Positions 3,486-11,483 of a DNA stretch of 64,000 nucleotides are shown piece by piece; position 1 is the first letter of the stretch; every line of letters begins with the position of its first letter. The DNA lies in IMG/VR virus record IMGVR_UViG_3300018004_000004, positions 62,001-126,000 of that record. One strand, 5' to 3'. The notes under the pieces were generated by a model. The model was given only the letters and a program-made list of their open reading frames with translations. It had not been told where the DNA came from and did no database searches. A program made the translations under genes and the position numbers.

Positions 3486-3561
3486 TGGTAGGTGGTGCAA
3501 ATGGTAGTCACGCCGGGCCTTGAACCCGGAGATCCTGGTTCGAATCCAGGCCTACCAACCA
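3486..3561 (+). tRNA. tRNA-Gln(TTG) with C33
   Basis: CCGGG-CCTTGAA-CCCGG; CCTGG-TTCGAAT-CCAGG; CCA. Confidence 0.92.
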
Positions 3562-3562
3562 T

Positions 3563-3637
3563 GGGTTCGTAGCTTAAAGGTAGAGCAACCGCCTTTTAAG
3601 CGGTGGAATGCTGGTTCAAATCCAGCCGGACCCACCA
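3563..3637 (+). tRNA. tRNA-Lys(TTT)
   Basis: ACCGC-CTTTTAA-GCGGT; CCA. Confidence 0.95.
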
Positions 3638-6995: not shown

Positions 6996-7313
6996 ATGAT
7001 ACCAACGCTTCTCAAGATCGCAGTGGGTATTCTGATTCCGGCCGCAACAGCAGACGGAGTCAGCACAGCTCACTTTCTGAGGAAAGGTTACACTGAAGCA
7101 GATCGAATCATGATCTGGATCTACGGCACCGATGATCCTTCAGTGAAGAGGATGTGGGTTCGTAGCAGCATTGCCGTAGCACTCGAGGTCCTTGTAGCAG
7201 GTATTGCAGCGCATTACTGGACACCTGCAGGATACGGATTTGGAGTTGGGTATCTGTGCCAGGCAGCTTATCACGTCTACTGTACAGTGAACAACTATAG
7301 GAACGTGCCATGA
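6996..7313 (+). CDS. small multi-pass membrane protein (DUF5658-like)
   Basis: Three hydrophobic segments; D..ST...L.KG..E motif shared with 7496-7849. Confidence 0.7.
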   Translation: MIPTLLKIAVGILIPAATADGVSTAHFLRKGYTEADRIMIWIYGTDDPSVKRMWVRSSIAVALEVLVAGIAAHYWTPAGYGFGVGYLCQAAYHVYCTVNNYRNVP

Positions 7314-7381: not shown

Positions 7382-7471
7382 GGAGGCGCAGCAGAGACGG
7401 GGATCTGCACTTGGCCGTAACCCAAGGTCCCAACGGGACTAGAGAAGGTTCAAATCCTTCCGTCTCCACCA
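7382..7471 (+). tRNA. tRNA-Tyr(GTA) with C33 and C8
   Basis: GGAGGCG/CGTCTCC acceptor; CTTGG-CCGTAAC-CCAAG; GTCCC/GGGAC variable arm; A73; CCA. Confidence 0.9.
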
Positions 7472-7495: not shown

Positions 7496-7849
7496 ATGTT
7501 TGATCCATCGACAGATCCAAGAACGTGGCCCAATCAACCGGGCTTCTGGGAATCACTCGGTATCTTCGTTCTGTATGCTTACATGCTCGTTGCTATCCTG
7601 GGCGACACGTATTACACAGGGGTCGGACTGGCAAAGGGATTGAAGGAAATGAATCCTATCAATCGCTGGCTCTTCCCCAAGTTGGGTCAAGCATTGACTT
7701 GTTTTGTTGAAGCCGCGGCAATCACAGTAGTAGGTGGAGTCTTCATGGCCTATAGTATGCCGCTGGCTTATGGTTATTGGGGACTCATCGCAGCCCTCGA
7801 AACCTGGATGGTTTATCGTAATCGCAAGATCCTAGGATTGAGTTTGTAA
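7496..7849 (+). CDS. small multi-pass membrane protein (DUF5658-like)
   Basis: AAGGAG RBS; GDTYYTGVGLAKGLKEMNPINRWLF motif; three TM segments. Confidence 0.8.
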   Translation: MFDPSTDPRTWPNQPGFWESLGIFVLYAYMLVAILGDTYYTGVGLAKGLKEMNPINRWLFPKLGQALTCFVEAAAITVVGGVFMAYSMPLAYGYWGLIAALETWMVYRNRKILGLSL

Positions 7850-8534: not shown

Positions 8535-8623
8535 GGAGGGCAGCGCTGAATGGTCGGCAACGGTCCCGAAAACCGAGACTCGTCGAAAGGCGAGACAGAG
8601 TTCGATTCTCTGGCCCTCCTCCA
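8535..8623 (+). tRNA. tRNA-Ser(CGA) with C33, A8 and U73
   Basis: GGAGGGC/GCCCTCC; CGGT-CCCGAAA-ACCG; long variable arm CTCGTC-GAAA-GGCGAG; CCA. Confidence 0.88.
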
Positions 8624-8706: not shown

Positions 8707-8877
8707 ATGAGTAGTACAGAAGATCTGATTTACAGGCTGCGCAAGCGCGCTGAGATACGAAGGCAGATAACTACACGCAAGAGCGTACAAGAAGGAAAGC
8801 CTGATCGTATCGCCGATCTTCTGGAAGAAGCAGCCAATGAGCTGCAAAGATTATTGGATTTGACCTGTAGTAGATGA
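8707..8877 (+). CDS. small conserved-type phage protein (56 aa), absent from the ORF track
   Basis: MSSTEDLIYRLRKRAEIRRQITTRKSVQEGKPDRIADLLEEAANELQRLLDLTCSR*. Confidence 0.8.
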   Translation: MSSTEDLIYRLRKRAEIRRQITTRKSVQEGKPDRIADLLEEAANELQRLLDLTCSR

Positions 8878-9002
8878 GTAGTCCTTGTATTCTGGCTCTG
8901 CCATTCGGAAATAGCAGAGCGCGTCAATCGGCACGGTGTTGTACAATCCGTGGTGGCGCTCACGGATTACAACGAGACTAATCATCTAGGTCAGTTGTTC
9001 TT

Positions 9003-9187: not shown

Positions 9188-9262
9188 GGCCCTATCGTCT
9201 ATGGGATAGGACTCCGGCTTCTCAAGCCGGCAACCCGGGTTCGATTCCCGGTGGGGTCACCA
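9188..9262 (+). tRNA. tRNA-Glu(CTC)
   Basis: CCGGC-TTCTCAA-GCCGG; CCA. Confidence 0.95.
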
Positions 9263-9296
9263 GTTTAACTTAGTCAAGGTCGGAGGACCAAGTACT

Positions 9297-9743
9297 ATGA
9301 GTAATGAAAAGAAAGACGCTACGCTTGGTATGTCACACGGTACGGCTACAAATAGATTACGTAAGCAGATAATGTTTAGATTACTGCAACGTTTGAATGA
9401 GAACTTTTGCTTTCGTTGTGGATGTGAAATACAATCAGTAGATGATCTAAGCATCGAACATAAGCAGCCTTGGGAAGGTATCAGTGCTGACTTATTCTGG
9501 GATGAAGAGAACATTGCCTTTTCTCACTTGCGATGCAATAGACCAGATAGACCAAGCGGTAGAAATGCGAATGCCAAGATTCCACCAATAGAAGGTGTAT
9601 GCTGGTGCGTTCCTGGCGATCATTTTGCTCCAGTCGATAACTTCTACAAGAATGAAAGTAGACCGACAGGATTACAGAACTGGTGCAAGGATCATAGACC
9701 TCCTCGATTAGGAGGCTACCACAAGTTTGCGATGCTCTGTTAG
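9297..9743 (+). CDS. HNH endonuclease with C-terminal Zn-binding domain
   Basis: CFRCG...LSIEHKQPW...NIAFSHLRCN; C-terminal CWC..DHF...NFYKN.SRPTGLQNWCKDH. Confidence 0.88.
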   Translation: MSNEKKDATLGMSHGTATNRLRKQIMFRLLQRLNENFCFRCGCEIQSVDDLSIEHKQPWEGISADLFWDEENIAFSHLRCNRPDRPSGRNANAKIPPIEGVCWCVPGDHFAPVDNFYKNESRPTGLQNWCKDHRPPRLGGYHKFAMLC

Positions 9744-9930
9744 TCAGCCGTGTATACGGAACATCATCGCCGATACGGTGACGTTAATCAACAGGAGTGT
9801 AACGAGCCTCGAAAACTCGTTTCGTCTGAAAAACCTCCGACCCTTGAGTTTAGATGTGTCGAGCGAGGACACATCGCATGGCTATCTGGGCGCCTCGAGC
9901 CGAAGGGTAGCCAGAGTTTAGCGGGACTAA
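9740..9930 (+). ncRNA. candidate ~190-nt multi-hairpin RNA directly after the HNH gene
   Basis: TTAGTC/GACTAA closing stem; hairpins CCGTG/TACGG, CATCG/CGGTG, AACGAG/CTCGTT, GATGTGTC/GACACATC, TGGCTATC/GGTAGCCA. Confidence 0.6.
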
Positions 9931-9940
9931 GTAGCTAGTG

Positions 9941-9990
9941 CTTTCCCCATCGGCTGCTACCTTGCCGTCGGCGGCATGGCCAGGGGAAAG
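9941..9990 (+). other. intergenic hairpin
   Basis: CTTTCCCC/GGGGAAAG closing stem with inner TGCCG/CGGCA. Confidence 0.45.
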
Positions 9991-10035
9991 GATCCTGTTC
10001 GCGACTGGATCTCACCCGCGGGTTTAGGAGACACA

Positions 10036-10194
10036 ATGTTTACACTTCTCAAGGTTGTAGTGGAAGGGATTCTTACCCTTCTTGTTTTCTTTGGCGGCAT
10101 GAAGTTCCAGCAACACTACCCTAACTTCATTGCGCGCGTTGATAGTATCCTAGCATGGATCAAGAACATCCTGCCAGGTACAACGAAGTCTTAA
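10036..10194 (+). CDS. small membrane protein (52 aa)
   Basis: TAGGAG RBS; MFTLLKVVVEGILTLLVFFGGMKF. Confidence 0.75.
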   Translation: MFTLLKVVVEGILTLLVFFGGMKFQQHYPNFIARVDSILAWIKNILPGTTKS

Positions 10195-10196
10195 GT

Positions 10197-10271
10197 GCCC
10201 AAGTCGTACATGGGTTAGGATCCCAATCTTTCAAGTTGGGGAACAGAGTTCGAGTCTCTGCTCGGGTACCA
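10197..10271 (+). tRNA. tRNA-Glu(TTC)
   Basis: CCAAT-CTTTCAA-GTTGG; CAGAG-TTCGAGT-CTCTG; CCA. Confidence 0.9.
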
Positions 10272-10272
10272 A

Positions 10273-10422
10273 ATGAACTTCAAGCGAAAGCGACCAAAGA
10301 ACGCACGCAGTGGCTGCCTAATGTGCAAGCCACATAAGATGAATGGAATCAAACATACTTACCATGTCAAAGGTATCAGAGGCAAGGTGAACATCAAGGA
10401 TTTAGAACGGAGAGTGGCCTAG
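10273..10422 (+). CDS. small basic CxxC protein (49 aa), absent from the ORF track
   Basis: MNFKRKRPKNARSGCLMCKPHKMNG...; the 3' end overlaps tRNA-Pro. Confidence 0.7.
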   Translation: MNFKRKRPKNARSGCLMCKPHKMNGIKHTYHVKGIRGKVNIKDLERRVA

Positions 10423-10486
10423 TCCGGTTTAAGGCGCGTGCCTTGGGCGCACGAGATCGAGAGTTCAAATCTCTCCTCTCCGACCA
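10408..10486 (+). tRNA. tRNA-Pro(TGG)
   Basis: CGTGC-CTTGGGC-GCACG; CCA. Confidence 0.95.
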
Positions 10487-10501: not shown

Positions 10502-10930
10502 ATGATGGATCTATTGCATAAGTTCTTACTGGGTGGCGAGATCTTCGCCGGCGCCGTAGCAAGCCTGGTATTTGTTTCTGTAGCAATAGGATCCATTAGA
10601 CACTGGGTGGACAAGGGCGCCAAGCCATTTGTCTATCCTGATGACGTACCTCTGGCAGAAGCCAAGGCAGCAGCAGAACCATACTGGCACAGAGCGCTGG
10701 TAGCTTTGGACATCTTCCTGAACGTGGTAGTCTTGTTTGGAGCCCAGGATGAGACGATGTCGACTCATGCCTGGCGCGCGGCGGTAGCCGGCAAGCTCTG
10801 GGGCAAGCTCATGAACCTGTGGCTCAATGGTTTTCAGCCTCAGCATGGCCCTCAGGCAGCTTCCGGCGATCTCGAACGAGCATTGGCTCGTGTTGCAGTA
10901 CTCATGAAAGCTTTGGGCTTATCTAAGTAA
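10502..10930 (+). CDS. membrane-anchored hypothetical phage protein
   Basis: GGAG RBS; N-terminal TM; ALD...N....G..DET.S..A.R motif. Confidence 0.75.
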   Translation: MMDLLHKFLLGGEIFAGAVASLVFVSVAIGSIRHWVDKGAKPFVYPDDVPLAEAKAAAEPYWHRALVALDIFLNVVVLFGAQDETMSTHAWRAAVAGKLWGKLMNLWLNGFQPQHGPQAASGDLERALARVAVLMKALGLSK

Positions 10931-11137: not shown

Positions 11138-11483
11138 GGGGACGTCCCGGTTTCGACAGATAGCGGAACGACCTGAATGCATGCCGGTGCCTGACGACCG
11201 TAACTGTTGGAAAACTTTAACTGCAGAGTTTGAAGAACTGCCGTTGGCTGCTTAAAGCAGCCACGTCCTACCTGACGATGCCTATTGATTGGGCTAGGGC
11301 GTAAACTAGTGGGCTAAGCTTCCCGGGTCAGCTCCCTGCGAGCCGGGCGGATGAAAACCAAGAAGGGATACTGGGACCTCACTTGTCCGGTCTGTAGGCC
11401 CCTGAGAAACCGAACGGAATAAGCATGTAGTATTCATAAGTAATGCTTTCTGGACACGGGTTCAACTCCCGTCGTCTCCACCA
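11138..11483 (+). ncRNA. ssrA: tmRNA; tag ORF 11223-11255 = (A)AEFEELPLAA*
   Basis: 5' GGGGACGTCCCGGTTTCGAC; 3' GACACGGGTTCAACTCCCGTCGTCTCCACCA with G3.U70; TAACT before the GCA resume codon; stop codon inside a hairpin. Confidence 0.96.

What the first reader, a model, noticed from the sequence alone, without database searches (positions are those of the whole stretch)
9297..9930. HNH nuclease whose stop codon begins a ~190-nt multi-hairpin RNA
Seen: the closing stem TTAGTC (9740-9745)/GACTAA (9925-9930) overlaps the HNH TAG and encloses at least five hairpins. One loop (CCTCG, 9807-9811) is complementary to CGAGG (9864-9868) of another hairpin, a possible kissing interaction. Established: small HNH genes are common mobile inserts in phage tRNA arrays, and some nucleases (IscB/HEARO, TnpB) are paired with an adjacent structured RNA. 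Inference, speculative: either an independent novel ncRNA or an RNA partner of the 148-aa HNH.
Basis: partly seen in the sequence, partly recalled or inferred. Interest (0 to 1): 0.62.

Follow-up and report, generated by a model that had tools for sequence, protein, structure and literature searches.

The report
Phage tRNA-array leader RNA, unrelated HNH
The hairpin-rich stretch is a real, conserved, folded non-coding RNA lying in front of a tiny membrane-protein gene in a giant phage's tRNA gene array, and the HNH nuclease next to it is an ordinary selfish gene that landed there later and is not its partner.

Summary

**The RNA.** The folded RNA spans about 9724-10022, roughly 300 nt rather than 190 nt. 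It has three modules:
- A: 9724-9852
- B: 9853-9920
- C: 9921-10022

It runs up to the ribosome-binding site of a 52-aa membrane-protein ORF (10036-10194). That ORF sits between tRNA-Glu(CUC) and tRNA-Glu(UUC).

**Covariation.** Three related phage contigs carry the RNA.
- Modules B and C show many compensatory base changes and no broken pairs.
- Module A has weak support.
- The proposed kissing loops have no comparative support.

**The HNH pairing is refuted both ways.**
- Three RNA-bearing relatives (L021, L024/L025, and L022 with module B only) have no HNH.
- Seven HNH homologue loci, one of them at the same inter-tRNA-Glu site, have no RNA.
- The HNH family normally ends at ...PPR. Here the stop is lost and 11 extra codons read through a tRNA 3' remnant into module A. 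That is why the stop codon lies inside the RNA.

**Other points.**
- Module order differs between relatives: A-B-C, B-A-C or B only. The junctions carry short GTTT-containing repeats.
- There is no Rfam match.

**Most likely function.** A cis-acting structured leader, or a processed spacer RNA, of the tRNA operon.

The parts
9188..9262 (+). tRNA-Glu(CUC), left neighbour of the locus
   Evidence: ARAGORN; Rfam tRNA model, 54.7 bits.
9297..9743 (+). 148-aa free-standing HNH endonuclease gene. It is an insertion absent from the closest RNA-bearing relatives.
   Evidence: Pfam HNH, 23.1 bits, E 8e-5. PHROG 23251 HNH endonuclease, E 3e-20. H55, N72, H77, C38, C41 and C80 are invariant in alignment A8. 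Absent in L021, L024 and L025.
9708..9743 (+). 11-codon C-terminal extension (LGGYHKFAMLC) plus the TAG stop. Relatives end at ...PPR, so TTA 9708-9710 stands where the family's stop codon lies.
   Evidence: Protein alignment A8. L017 reads ...CCG CGT TAG.
9713..9723 (+). Remnant AGGCTACCACA. It is identical to the 3' end (acceptor strand plus CCA plus CA) of the L021-type tRNA-Glu(CUC), and marks the right junction of the HNH insertion.
   Evidence: Alignment A1 and printed sequences. BLAST homology with L021 starts at 9713.
9724..9852 (+). RNA module A, three hairpins. Helices: 9725-9734/9765-9774, 9738-9741/9760-9763, 9748-9751/9756-9759, 9775-9777/9782-9784 and 9794-9806/9821-9838.
   Evidence: RNAalifold on A2. 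Two compensatory pairs, 9730/9769 and 9741/9760. 99% of cells are paired, but 56 of 500 shuffles reach the observed value, so support is weak.
9853..9920 (+). RNA module B, two hairpins: B1 9853-9860/9868-9875 and B2 9876-9889/9900-9917. It is the only module present in all four sequence types, and always lies upstream of the small ORF.
   Evidence: z = -3.84. Six of 11 B2 pairs have double changes, 100% of cells are paired, and 0 of 500 shuffles reach the observed value. Covariance model R1 finds it in L021, L022, L024 and L025 only.
9921..10022 (+). RNA module C, a four-way junction. Closing helix 9921-9925/10015-10019; arms 9926-9929/9936-9939, 9941-9948/9983-9990 (with 9952-9956/9977-9981 and 9963-9967/9972-9976) and 9991-9995/10007-10011.
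   Evidence: The single-sequence MFE equals the alifold consensus. Five compensatory pairs. All 11 substituted columns keep pairing. One of 500 shuffles reaches the observed value.
9846..9852 (+). Junction heptamer GAGTTTA between A and B. Related copies: AGTTTG 9724-9729, GAGTTTA 9914-9920 and GTTTAG 10022-10027.
   Evidence: The same repeats bound the modules in L021, L024 and L022. The joint in the RNA-library contig lies in the GTTTAG repeat.
10026..10031 (+). Shine-Dalgarno-like AGGAGA, 4 nt upstream of the ATG of the small ORF.
   Evidence: Direct reading. Conserved in L021, L024 and L022.
10036..10194 (+). 52-aa predicted single-pass membrane protein gene. The RNA is its upstream leader.
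   Evidence: ORF. Homologues at 75-88% identity in alignment A9. Distant 46-49-aa homologues in other large phage contigs. The alternative 72-aa start is out of frame in L021.
10197..10271 (+). tRNA-Glu(UUC), starting 2 nt after the ORF stop codon.
   Evidence: ARAGORN.

Best explanation
**Setting.** The window is part of a 215-kb phage whose roughly 10-kb tRNA array lies entirely on the + strand. Between tRNA-Glu(CUC) and tRNA-Glu(UUC), this phage lineage carries a small cassette: a structured non-coding leader RNA followed by a 52-aa membrane-protein gene.

**The leader.** It is built from three autonomous folding modules.
- Module B, two hairpins, is the ancestral part. It is found wherever the ORF sits inside a tRNA array.
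- Modules A and C were added at short GTTT-containing junction repeats, and their order can differ between relatives.

**How it is made (inferred).** No promoter or terminator is seen inside the stretch. The RNA is therefore most likely made as part of the polycistronic tRNA precursor, and set free when the flanking tRNAs are cut out by RNase P and the 3' processing enzymes.

**What it does (inferred).** The leader acts in cis on the small gene.
- Its hairpins start only 1-4 nt after the tRNA's CCA end in HNH-less relatives. There they could give the released mRNA a protected, structured 5' end.
- Module C is a cloverleaf-shaped four-way junction ending about 6 nt before the ribosome-binding site. 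It may define a processing point or set the accessibility of that site.

**The HNH gene.** It is a free-standing homing endonuclease of a family specialised on phage tRNA arrays. It inserted at the 3' end of tRNA-Glu(CUC), lost its own stop codon, and now terminates 20 nt inside module A. It has no functional tie to the RNA.

**Shown versus inferred.** Shown: the anatomy, the conservation, the covariation, the + strand specificity, and the independence of HNH and RNA. Inferred: co-transcription, processing and the cis-regulatory role.
For: **Independence of HNH and RNA**
- L021 and L024/L025 run tRNA-Glu(CUC), then RNA, then ORF, then tRNA-Glu(UUC), with no HNH. Identity to window 9713/9724-10196 is 86-98%.
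- L017-L020 have a 71%-identical HNH between the same two tRNAs, with 9 nt to the next tRNA.
- L005, L006, L032, L034 and L035 have HNH homologues wedged between tRNAs. L004's lies in a tRNA array but is followed by an ORF.
- Covariance models R1 and R2 find nothing in any of these loci.

**The RNA is real**
- Compensatory pairs number 6 in module B, 5 in C and 2 in A, with 99-100% of cells paired.
- Slid-partner controls drop to 24-53% paired.
- In module C every substituted column preserves pairing.

**Strand**
- Conserved G.U pairs, and substitutions that create G.U, would be A.C mismatches on the other strand. Examples are L024 at 9945/9986 and L021 at 9805/9822.
- All tRNAs are on the + strand.

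**Link to the ORF**
- Module B always lies directly upstream of the ORF's AGGAGA. This holds in the window, L021, L024/L025, L022 and the RNA-library contig.
- ORF homologues outside tRNA arrays lack B (L023, L036).

**Not coding**
- Module permutation and 1-nt indels break every candidate frame.

**Transcription signals**
- No promoter-like or terminator-like site lies within 9744-10035.

**Lost stop codon**
- Relatives end at ...PPR.
Against: - Only three to four distinct sequences carry the RNA. All come from closely related, mosaic phages, so covariation counts rest on few events.
- Module A and several helices are invariant or weakly supported.
- Other small ORFs in the same array abut their upstream tRNA with only 1-27 nt and no structured leader. 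A leader is therefore not a general need of genes lodged in tRNA arrays.
- No transcript ends are known. The one RNA library that holds a relative is kept as contigs, at depth about 2, and may contain DNA.
- The invariant loops would fit a trans-acting RNA equally well.
Confidence: 0.55

Rival explanations
1. The modules are one or several independent, stable small RNAs. They would be cut out of the tRNA precursor and act in trans. From my own knowledge, this is like the two stable RNAs of unknown function encoded in the phage T4 tRNA gene cluster.
For: - The RNA lies inside a tRNA operon on the tRNA strand.
- The modules are tRNA-sized (68-129 nt), fold autonomously and can change order without loss.
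- Loop sequences of modules A and C are invariant while the stems covary.
- Module C has a cloverleaf-like four-way junction that could be a substrate for tRNA-processing enzymes.
Against: - Module B is never found apart from the small ORF, and modules A and C never apart from B plus the ORF.
- There is no evidence of processed ends.
- The loop of hairpin B1 is not conserved in L022.
Confidence: 0.25
2. The modules are selfish or decaying cassettes with no function for the phage. They could be small mobile structured elements, or worn-down tRNA genes, that spread or shuffle at GTTTAG/GAGTTT sites.
For: - Module order differs (A-B-C, B-A-C, B only), and each module is bounded by 4-7-nt direct repeats.
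- Module C sits exactly between two GTTTAG copies, and 'empty' sites exist in L022 and in the RNA-library contig.
- The array is highly mosaic: tRNA-Pro is 100% identical to L021's, while the adjacent tRNA-Glu(UUC) is 71% identical.
Against: - Each module is single-copy in the 215-kb genome, and none appears in three other complete or near-complete related phage genomes.
- There is no tRNA signal from ARAGORN or the Rfam tRNA model.
- Every substitution in module C preserves pairing. That indicates purifying selection on the fold.
Confidence: 0.13
3. The RNA is a guide or scaffold partner of the HNH nuclease (IscB/HEARO-like or TnpB-like), or the core of an HNH-carrying group I intron.
For: Only physical adjacency and the overlap of the stop codon with module A.
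Against: - The RNA occurs without HNH, and HNH occurs without the RNA.
- The protein is 148 aa and has only an HNH domain.
- There is no HEARO or group I intron hit even at E up to 10.
- HNH-less alleles keep the RNA, so the two are not one mobile unit.
- The overlap comes from a lost stop codon.
- The joint seen in an RNA library does not obey the group I rule of a U before the 5' site and a G at the intron end. The same form exists as contig L022.
Confidence: 0.02

Closest known systems
Free-standing homing endonucleases in phage tRNA gene clusters (for example SegB of T-even phages, which cleaves within tRNA genes; PMC13096335)
   Same: - A small nuclease gene wedged between tRNA genes.
- Presence/absence polymorphism between related phages at the same site (L017 against L012/L013, and the window against L021/L024).
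- Flanking mosaicism, and a duplicated tRNA 3' remnant at the junction.
   Different: - It is an HNH protein, whereas SegB is GIY-YIG.
- Cleavage activity and target were not tested.
- The gene has lost its family-typical stop codon and reads 11 codons into neighbouring RNA-coding sequence.
Stable small RNAs of unknown function encoded within the phage T4 tRNA cluster (from my own knowledge; the source could not be read here)
   Same: A non-tRNA structured RNA embedded in a phage tRNA operon on the tRNA strand, presumably released by tRNA processing.
   Different: - No sequence comparison was made.
- Here the RNA is always tied to a downstream small ORF.
- It is modular, with variable module order.
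IscB omega-RNA / HEARO and TnpB omega-RNA systems
   Same: A nuclease gene lies next to a structured non-coding RNA.
   Different: - The protein lacks RuvC and other IscB domains.
- The RNA has no HEARO match.
- The RNA and the nuclease occur independently of each other, so it neither belongs to nor works like these systems.
5'-terminal stem-loop mRNA stabilisers and tRNA-like processing signals (general knowledge of bacterial RNase E, RNase P and RNase Z biology)
   Same: - Hairpins start 1-4 nt after the upstream tRNA's CCA end in HNH-less relatives.
- A cloverleaf-shaped module ends just before the ribosome-binding site.
   Different: This is purely inferred. No ends were mapped, and module C is not recognised by tRNA models.

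Membership tests
HNH endonuclease (Pfam PF01844) | Match to the family profile above its curated cut-off | tested here: met
   23.1 bits against a cut-off of 21.4, E 8e-5. PHROG 23251 'HNH endonuclease', E 3e-20.
HNH endonuclease (Pfam PF01844) | Catalytic His...Asn...His and Cys ligands conserved | tested here: met
   H55, N72, H77, C38, C41 and C80 are invariant across 8 homologues.
Free-standing homing endonuclease gene | Presence/absence polymorphism at one locus among related genomes | tested here: met
   The HNH lies between the two tRNA-Glu genes in the window and in L017. It is absent there in L021, L024/L025, L012, L013 and L005.
Free-standing homing endonuclease gene | Cleaves the endonuclease-less allele and is copied into it | not testable with these tools
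   Needs an in-vitro cleavage assay or a co-infection assay.
IscB/HEARO or TnpB omega-RNA system | Large RuvC-containing effector protein (about 400 aa or more) | tested here: not met
   The protein is 148 aa with an HNH domain only.
IscB/HEARO or TnpB omega-RNA system | Adjacent RNA matches the HEARO/omega-RNA family | tested here: not met
   No such hit at E up to 10 in 9263-10196 or in L024 1560-1900.
IscB/HEARO or TnpB omega-RNA system | RNA and nuclease co-occur across homologues | tested here: not met
   The RNA occurs without HNH in L021, L024/L025 and L022. The HNH occurs without the RNA in seven loci.
Group I intron carrying an HNH ORF | Match to the group I intron model; intron and ORF absent together from intron-less alleles | tested here: not met
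   No Rfam hit. HNH-less alleles keep the RNA.
tRNA or tRNA-like gene | Recognised by ARAGORN or the Rfam tRNA model | tested here: not met
   No call within 9263-10196. Module C has only the outline of a four-way junction.
Conserved structured RNA (generic) | Base pairs maintained by compensatory changes beyond controls | tested here: met
   Module B: 6 pairs, 0 of 500 shuffles. Module C: 5 pairs, 1 of 500 shuffles. Module A: 2 pairs, 56 of 500 shuffles, which is weak.
Intrinsic terminator | GC-rich hairpin followed by a U run | tested here: not met
   No terminator-like site within 9744-10035.
Stable RNA of a phage tRNA operon (T4 type) | Accumulates as a discrete processed RNA | not testable with these tools
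   Only contigs of one RNA library were available, and they show no ends.

The most novel reading that the evidence does not exclude
The three modules could be a new kind of cassette in phage tRNA operons. They would be tRNA-sized, autonomously folding RNA units that are gained, lost and re-ordered at short GTTTAG/GAGTTT junction repeats, much as tRNA genes are shuffled. Module C would then act as a tRNA-mimicking processing signal that creates the 5' end of an mRNA lodged in the array.
Probability: 0.15. Interest if true: 0.6.

Novelty: new variant of a known kind. Interest (0 to 1): 0.4.

Why it matters
**What the result removes.** It takes a tempting but wrong lead off the table. This is not a miniature RNA-guided HNH nuclease.

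**What it adds.**
- A small, previously unclassified structured RNA family from peat and wetland jumbo phages. Its helices are supported by covariation, and its module order varies between relatives.
- A clear example of how phage tRNA arrays evolve as mosaics of tRNAs, homing endonucleases, tiny membrane-protein genes and structured spacers.
- An example of how a homing endonuclease insertion can fuse its reading frame to neighbouring RNA-coding DNA.

**If the leader does control processing or stability.** It would be a handle for understanding how protein-coding genes are expressed from inside tRNA operons.

Tried and rejected
**Searches that found nothing or nothing new**
- Rfam at permissive thresholds, on the window and on the B-A-C arrangement. 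Only chance-level hits appeared: wcaG, snoRNA and miRNA models.
- BLASTN and TBLASTN against GenBank phages. Only tRNAs and generic HNH N-terminal halves matched.
- nhmmer and blastn of the RNA against loci of more distant relatives. Nothing matched.
- Exact-pattern scans of IMG/VR, JGI metagenomes and GTDB genomes with conserved blocks of modules A, B and C. They returned only the same phage and the L024 contig. Two further hits were chance matches inside what reads as an ordinary protein-coding gene.
- Covariance models of modules B and C against the phage's own genome and three related phage genomes. No further copies were found.

**Hypotheses considered and dropped**
- Group I or group II splicing as the source of the joint seen in an RNA library. 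This was rejected because no placement of the joint within its shared letters gives both a U before the 5' site and a G at the intron end, and because the same B-only form exists in contig L022.
- Integron attC-like sites. The junction repeat does not fit GTTRRRY, and the modules are not single long imperfect hairpins.
- Co-conversion of tRNA-Glu(CUC) with the HNH. tRNA identities are all 63-71% and do not discriminate.
- A protein-coding reading of 9727-9921 or 9750-9938, and of the 72-aa N-terminal extension of the small ORF. Permutation and indels break these frames.

**Other dead ends**
- The upstream region of a distant ORF homologue (L036) holds only the terminator of the preceding gene.
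- The T4 genome review could not be read.

Full report
**1. Context**

The window is bases 62001-126000 of a 215-kb IMG/VR virus record. Its first 11.5 kb hold a + strand array of 25 tRNA genes called by ARAGORN on that strand, plus a tmRNA at 11138-11483. Small ORFs are interspersed among them.

The finding lies between tRNA-Glu(CUC) at 9188-9262 and tRNA-Glu(UUC) at 10197-10271. That 934-nt gap contains three things:
- the 148-aa HNH ORF, 9297-9743;
- 292 nt with no credible ORF, 9744-10035;
- a 52-aa ORF, 10036-10194, preceded by AGGAGA.

**2. Checking the observation**

The MFE fold of 9735-9935 uses the TTAGTC/GACTAA stem.

The fold as a whole is not better than chance: z = -1.38 for 201 nt and also for 306 nt. 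Module by module, only 9853-9920 is exceptional in a single sequence: z = -3.84, with 0 of 200 shuffles folding as well.

No Rfam family matches inside the stretch, even at E up to 10.

**3. The HNH**

*Identity.* It is a bona fide HNH endonuclease. Pfam scores it above the cut-off, and PHROG 23251 gives E 3e-20. The catalytic and Cys residues are invariant. It belongs to a large family of roughly 140-aa proteins, with 260 hits at E <= 1e-10.

*Genomic setting.* Every homologue locus I fetched lies in a phage-type tRNA array. The HNH stop and the next gene are spaced as follows:

| Locus | What follows the HNH stop |
|---|---|
| L005 | tRNA after 8 nt |
| L006 | tRNA after 39 nt |
| L017-L020 | tRNA after 9 nt |
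| L032 | tRNA after 7 nt |
| L034 | tRNA after 2 nt |
| L035 | overlapping tRNA |
| L004 | an ORF |

L017 is decisive. Its HNH is 71% identical and sits between the same two tRNA-Glu genes, with nothing else there. More distant relatives have the two tRNA-Glu genes adjacent with no HNH (L012, L013, L005). This is the pattern of a free-standing homing endonuclease gene.

*The stop codon.* The family ends at ...HRPPR followed by a stop. L017 reads CCG CGT TAG. The window has TTA at that position (9708-9710) and continues for 11 codons. It reads first through AGGCTACCACA (9713-9723), then into the first 20 nt of the RNA. That 11-mer is identical to the 3' end of the tRNA-Glu(CUC) of L021 plus the two following bases. 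So the stop codon lying inside the RNA is an accident of the insertion junction.

**4. The RNA has homologues without HNH**

Homologues of the 52-aa ORF led to four contigs.
- L021 runs tRNA-Glu(CUC), about 314 nt of RNA, the ORF, then tRNA-Glu(UUC). It is 86% identical to window 9713-10271.
- L024 and L025 are two independent assemblies with identical sequence. They are 92-98% identical to the window, but their order is 9852-9919, then 9724-9853, then 9914-10196.
- L022 has tRNA-Asp, then only the counterpart of 9853-9920, then the ORF.
- L023, and the distant homologue in L036, have the ORF in ordinary protein-coding contexts with no such RNA.

None of these contigs has an HNH at the site.

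**5. Structure**

I split the RNA at the rearrangement points into modules A (9724-9852), B (9853-9920) and C (9921-10022). RNAalifold and explicit pair counts give the following.

| Module | Pairs | Pairs with changes on both sides | Cells paired | Shuffles reaching the observed value |
|---|---|---|---|---|
| B | 21 | 6, all in helix 9876-9887/9905-9917 | 100% | 0 of 500 |
| C | 35 | 5 | 100% | 1 of 500 |
| A | 36 | 2 (9730/9769 and 9741/9760) | 99% | 56 of 500 |

- Module B: slid-partner controls fall to 24-44% paired.
- Module C: three of the five double changes are in 9941-9948/9983-9990 and two are in 9991-9995/10007-10011. All 11 substituted columns keep pairing.
- Module A: the support is suggestive only.

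With three or four related sequences these are few events. But the near absence of any substitution that breaks a pair is hard to explain without selection on the fold.

Several pairs are G.U, and three substitutions create G.U. On the opposite strand these would be A.C mismatches. The structure therefore belongs to the + strand, which is the tRNA strand.

L024 has G at 9741 and A at 9743. The partner GACTAA is invariant. T9741, the first base of the stop codon, covaries with A9760 instead.

*The kissing interaction is untestable.* One loop is invariant. The other is entirely different in L022, which also lacks module A.

Module C folds as a four-way junction with a cloverleaf outline. One arm has a T-arm-like loop, UUCGCGA closed by a G-C pair. 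Neither ARAGORN nor the tRNA model recognises it.

**6. Modularity**

The modules are bounded by short GTTT-containing repeats:
- AGTTTG at 9724;
- GAGTTTA at 9846 and 9914;
- GTTTAG at 10022.

Three arrangements exist: A-B-C in the window and L021, B-A-C in L024/L025, and B alone in L022.

A 151-nt contig from a wetland metatranscriptome library joins an L024-type tRNA end, module B, and the ribosome-binding site plus ORF start directly. It skips 9916-10021, with six shared letters at the joint.

I considered splicing as the cause. No placement of the joint within its shared letters gives both a U before the 5' site and a G at the intron end, as group I splicing requires. There is no intron-model hit. 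The same B-only form exists as contig L022. A DNA variant is the simpler reading.

It remains open whether the modules moved by insertion with target duplication or by recombination at microhomology. Each module is single-copy in the 215-kb genome. None is present in three other complete or near-complete related phage genomes, or in any other locus. Pattern scans of IMG/VR, JGI metagenomes and GTDB genomes found no further carriers.

**7. What it most likely does**

No promoter-like or terminator-like site lies within the stretch. The ORF stop is 2 nt from the next tRNA. In HNH-less relatives the first hairpin starts 1-4 nt after the upstream CCA end. I infer that the RNA is transcribed with the tRNAs and released with the ORF by tRNA processing.

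Module B is strictly associated with the ORF when the ORF is inside a tRNA array, and absent when it is not. This points to a cis role: a structured, protected 5' end, and, for module C, a defined processing point or control of ribosome-binding-site access.

Two observations argue against that. Six other small ORFs in the array abut their upstream tRNA with no leader. And the invariant loops would suit a trans-acting RNA. I give the leader model about 0.55, a trans-acting stable RNA about 0.25, functionless shuffling cassettes about 0.13, and any HNH partnership about 0.02.

**8. Comparison and novelty**

The HNH behaves like the homing endonucleases known from phage tRNA clusters. One example is SegB, which cuts within tRNA genes (PMC13096335). 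The HNH here is an ordinary new member of that kind.

The RNA matches no described family. Its kind, a structured non-tRNA RNA inside a phage tRNA operon, has precedent in T4; that statement rests on my own knowledge, since the source was not readable. Its fixed link to a small ORF and its permutable modules make it a new variant. It neither belongs to nor works like the IscB, HEARO or TnpB systems.

**9. Limits**

- The RNA family has very few members.
- There is no raw-read expression data.
- The host is unknown. Samples are peat and wetland metagenomes.

Noticed in passing
window 11138-11483: The phage encodes a tmRNA at the end of the tRNA array (Rfam 150 bits; tag AEFEELPLAA). In the wetland RNA library, contigs of a relative cover its 3' part at far higher word depth (about 400-1600) than the rest of the array.
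   Followed up: no
window 10273-10422: A 49-aa basic ORF with a CxxC motif lies between tRNA-Glu(UUC) and tRNA-Pro(UGG). It is absent from L021, L024/L025 and an RNA-library contig (which skips 10271-10405), where the two tRNAs are adjacent. This is another presence/absence cassette.
   Followed up: partly
window 10408-10486 vs L021 2736-2814: tRNA-Pro(UGG) is 100% identical between the window and L021. The adjacent tRNA-Glu(UUC) is only about 71% identical, and the RNA plus ORF about 86%. The array is a fine-scale recombination mosaic.
   Followed up: partly
window 7382-7468 and 8535-8619: Rfam finds tRNA-like genes that ARAGORN did not call. The first scores 39 bits on the tRNA model. The second scores 36 bits on the tRNA-Sec model, below its threshold, and is probably a long-arm tRNA.
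   Followed up: no
window 3486-3574: ARAGORN calls overlapping genes on opposite strands: tRNA-Gln on + at 3486-3561 and tRNA-Arg on - at 3502-3574. The minus-strand call is probably spurious.
   Followed up: no
L017 1449-1853 and 3264-3725: A related tRNA array carries two paralogous HNH genes of this family (134 aa and 153 aa) at different inter-tRNA sites.
   Followed up: no
L036 1201-1341 (463-kb contig): Distant 46-49-aa homologues of the small membrane protein (pattern MF.L.K...GG.KF...YP) occur in other very large phage-like contigs. There they lie in ordinary protein-coding operons, preceded by a classical terminator.
   Followed up: partly
window 8853-8998: About 140 nt here, covering the end of a 56-aa ORF and non-coding sequence, have no counterpart in L024. 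L021 has unrelated sequence at this position.
   Followed up: no
window 6996-7313, 7496-7849, 10036-10194, 10502-10930: Several small predicted membrane proteins are scattered through the tRNA array. The 142-aa one has 61-65%-identical homologues next to tRNA arrays in most of the other IMG/VR phages examined.
   Followed up: partly
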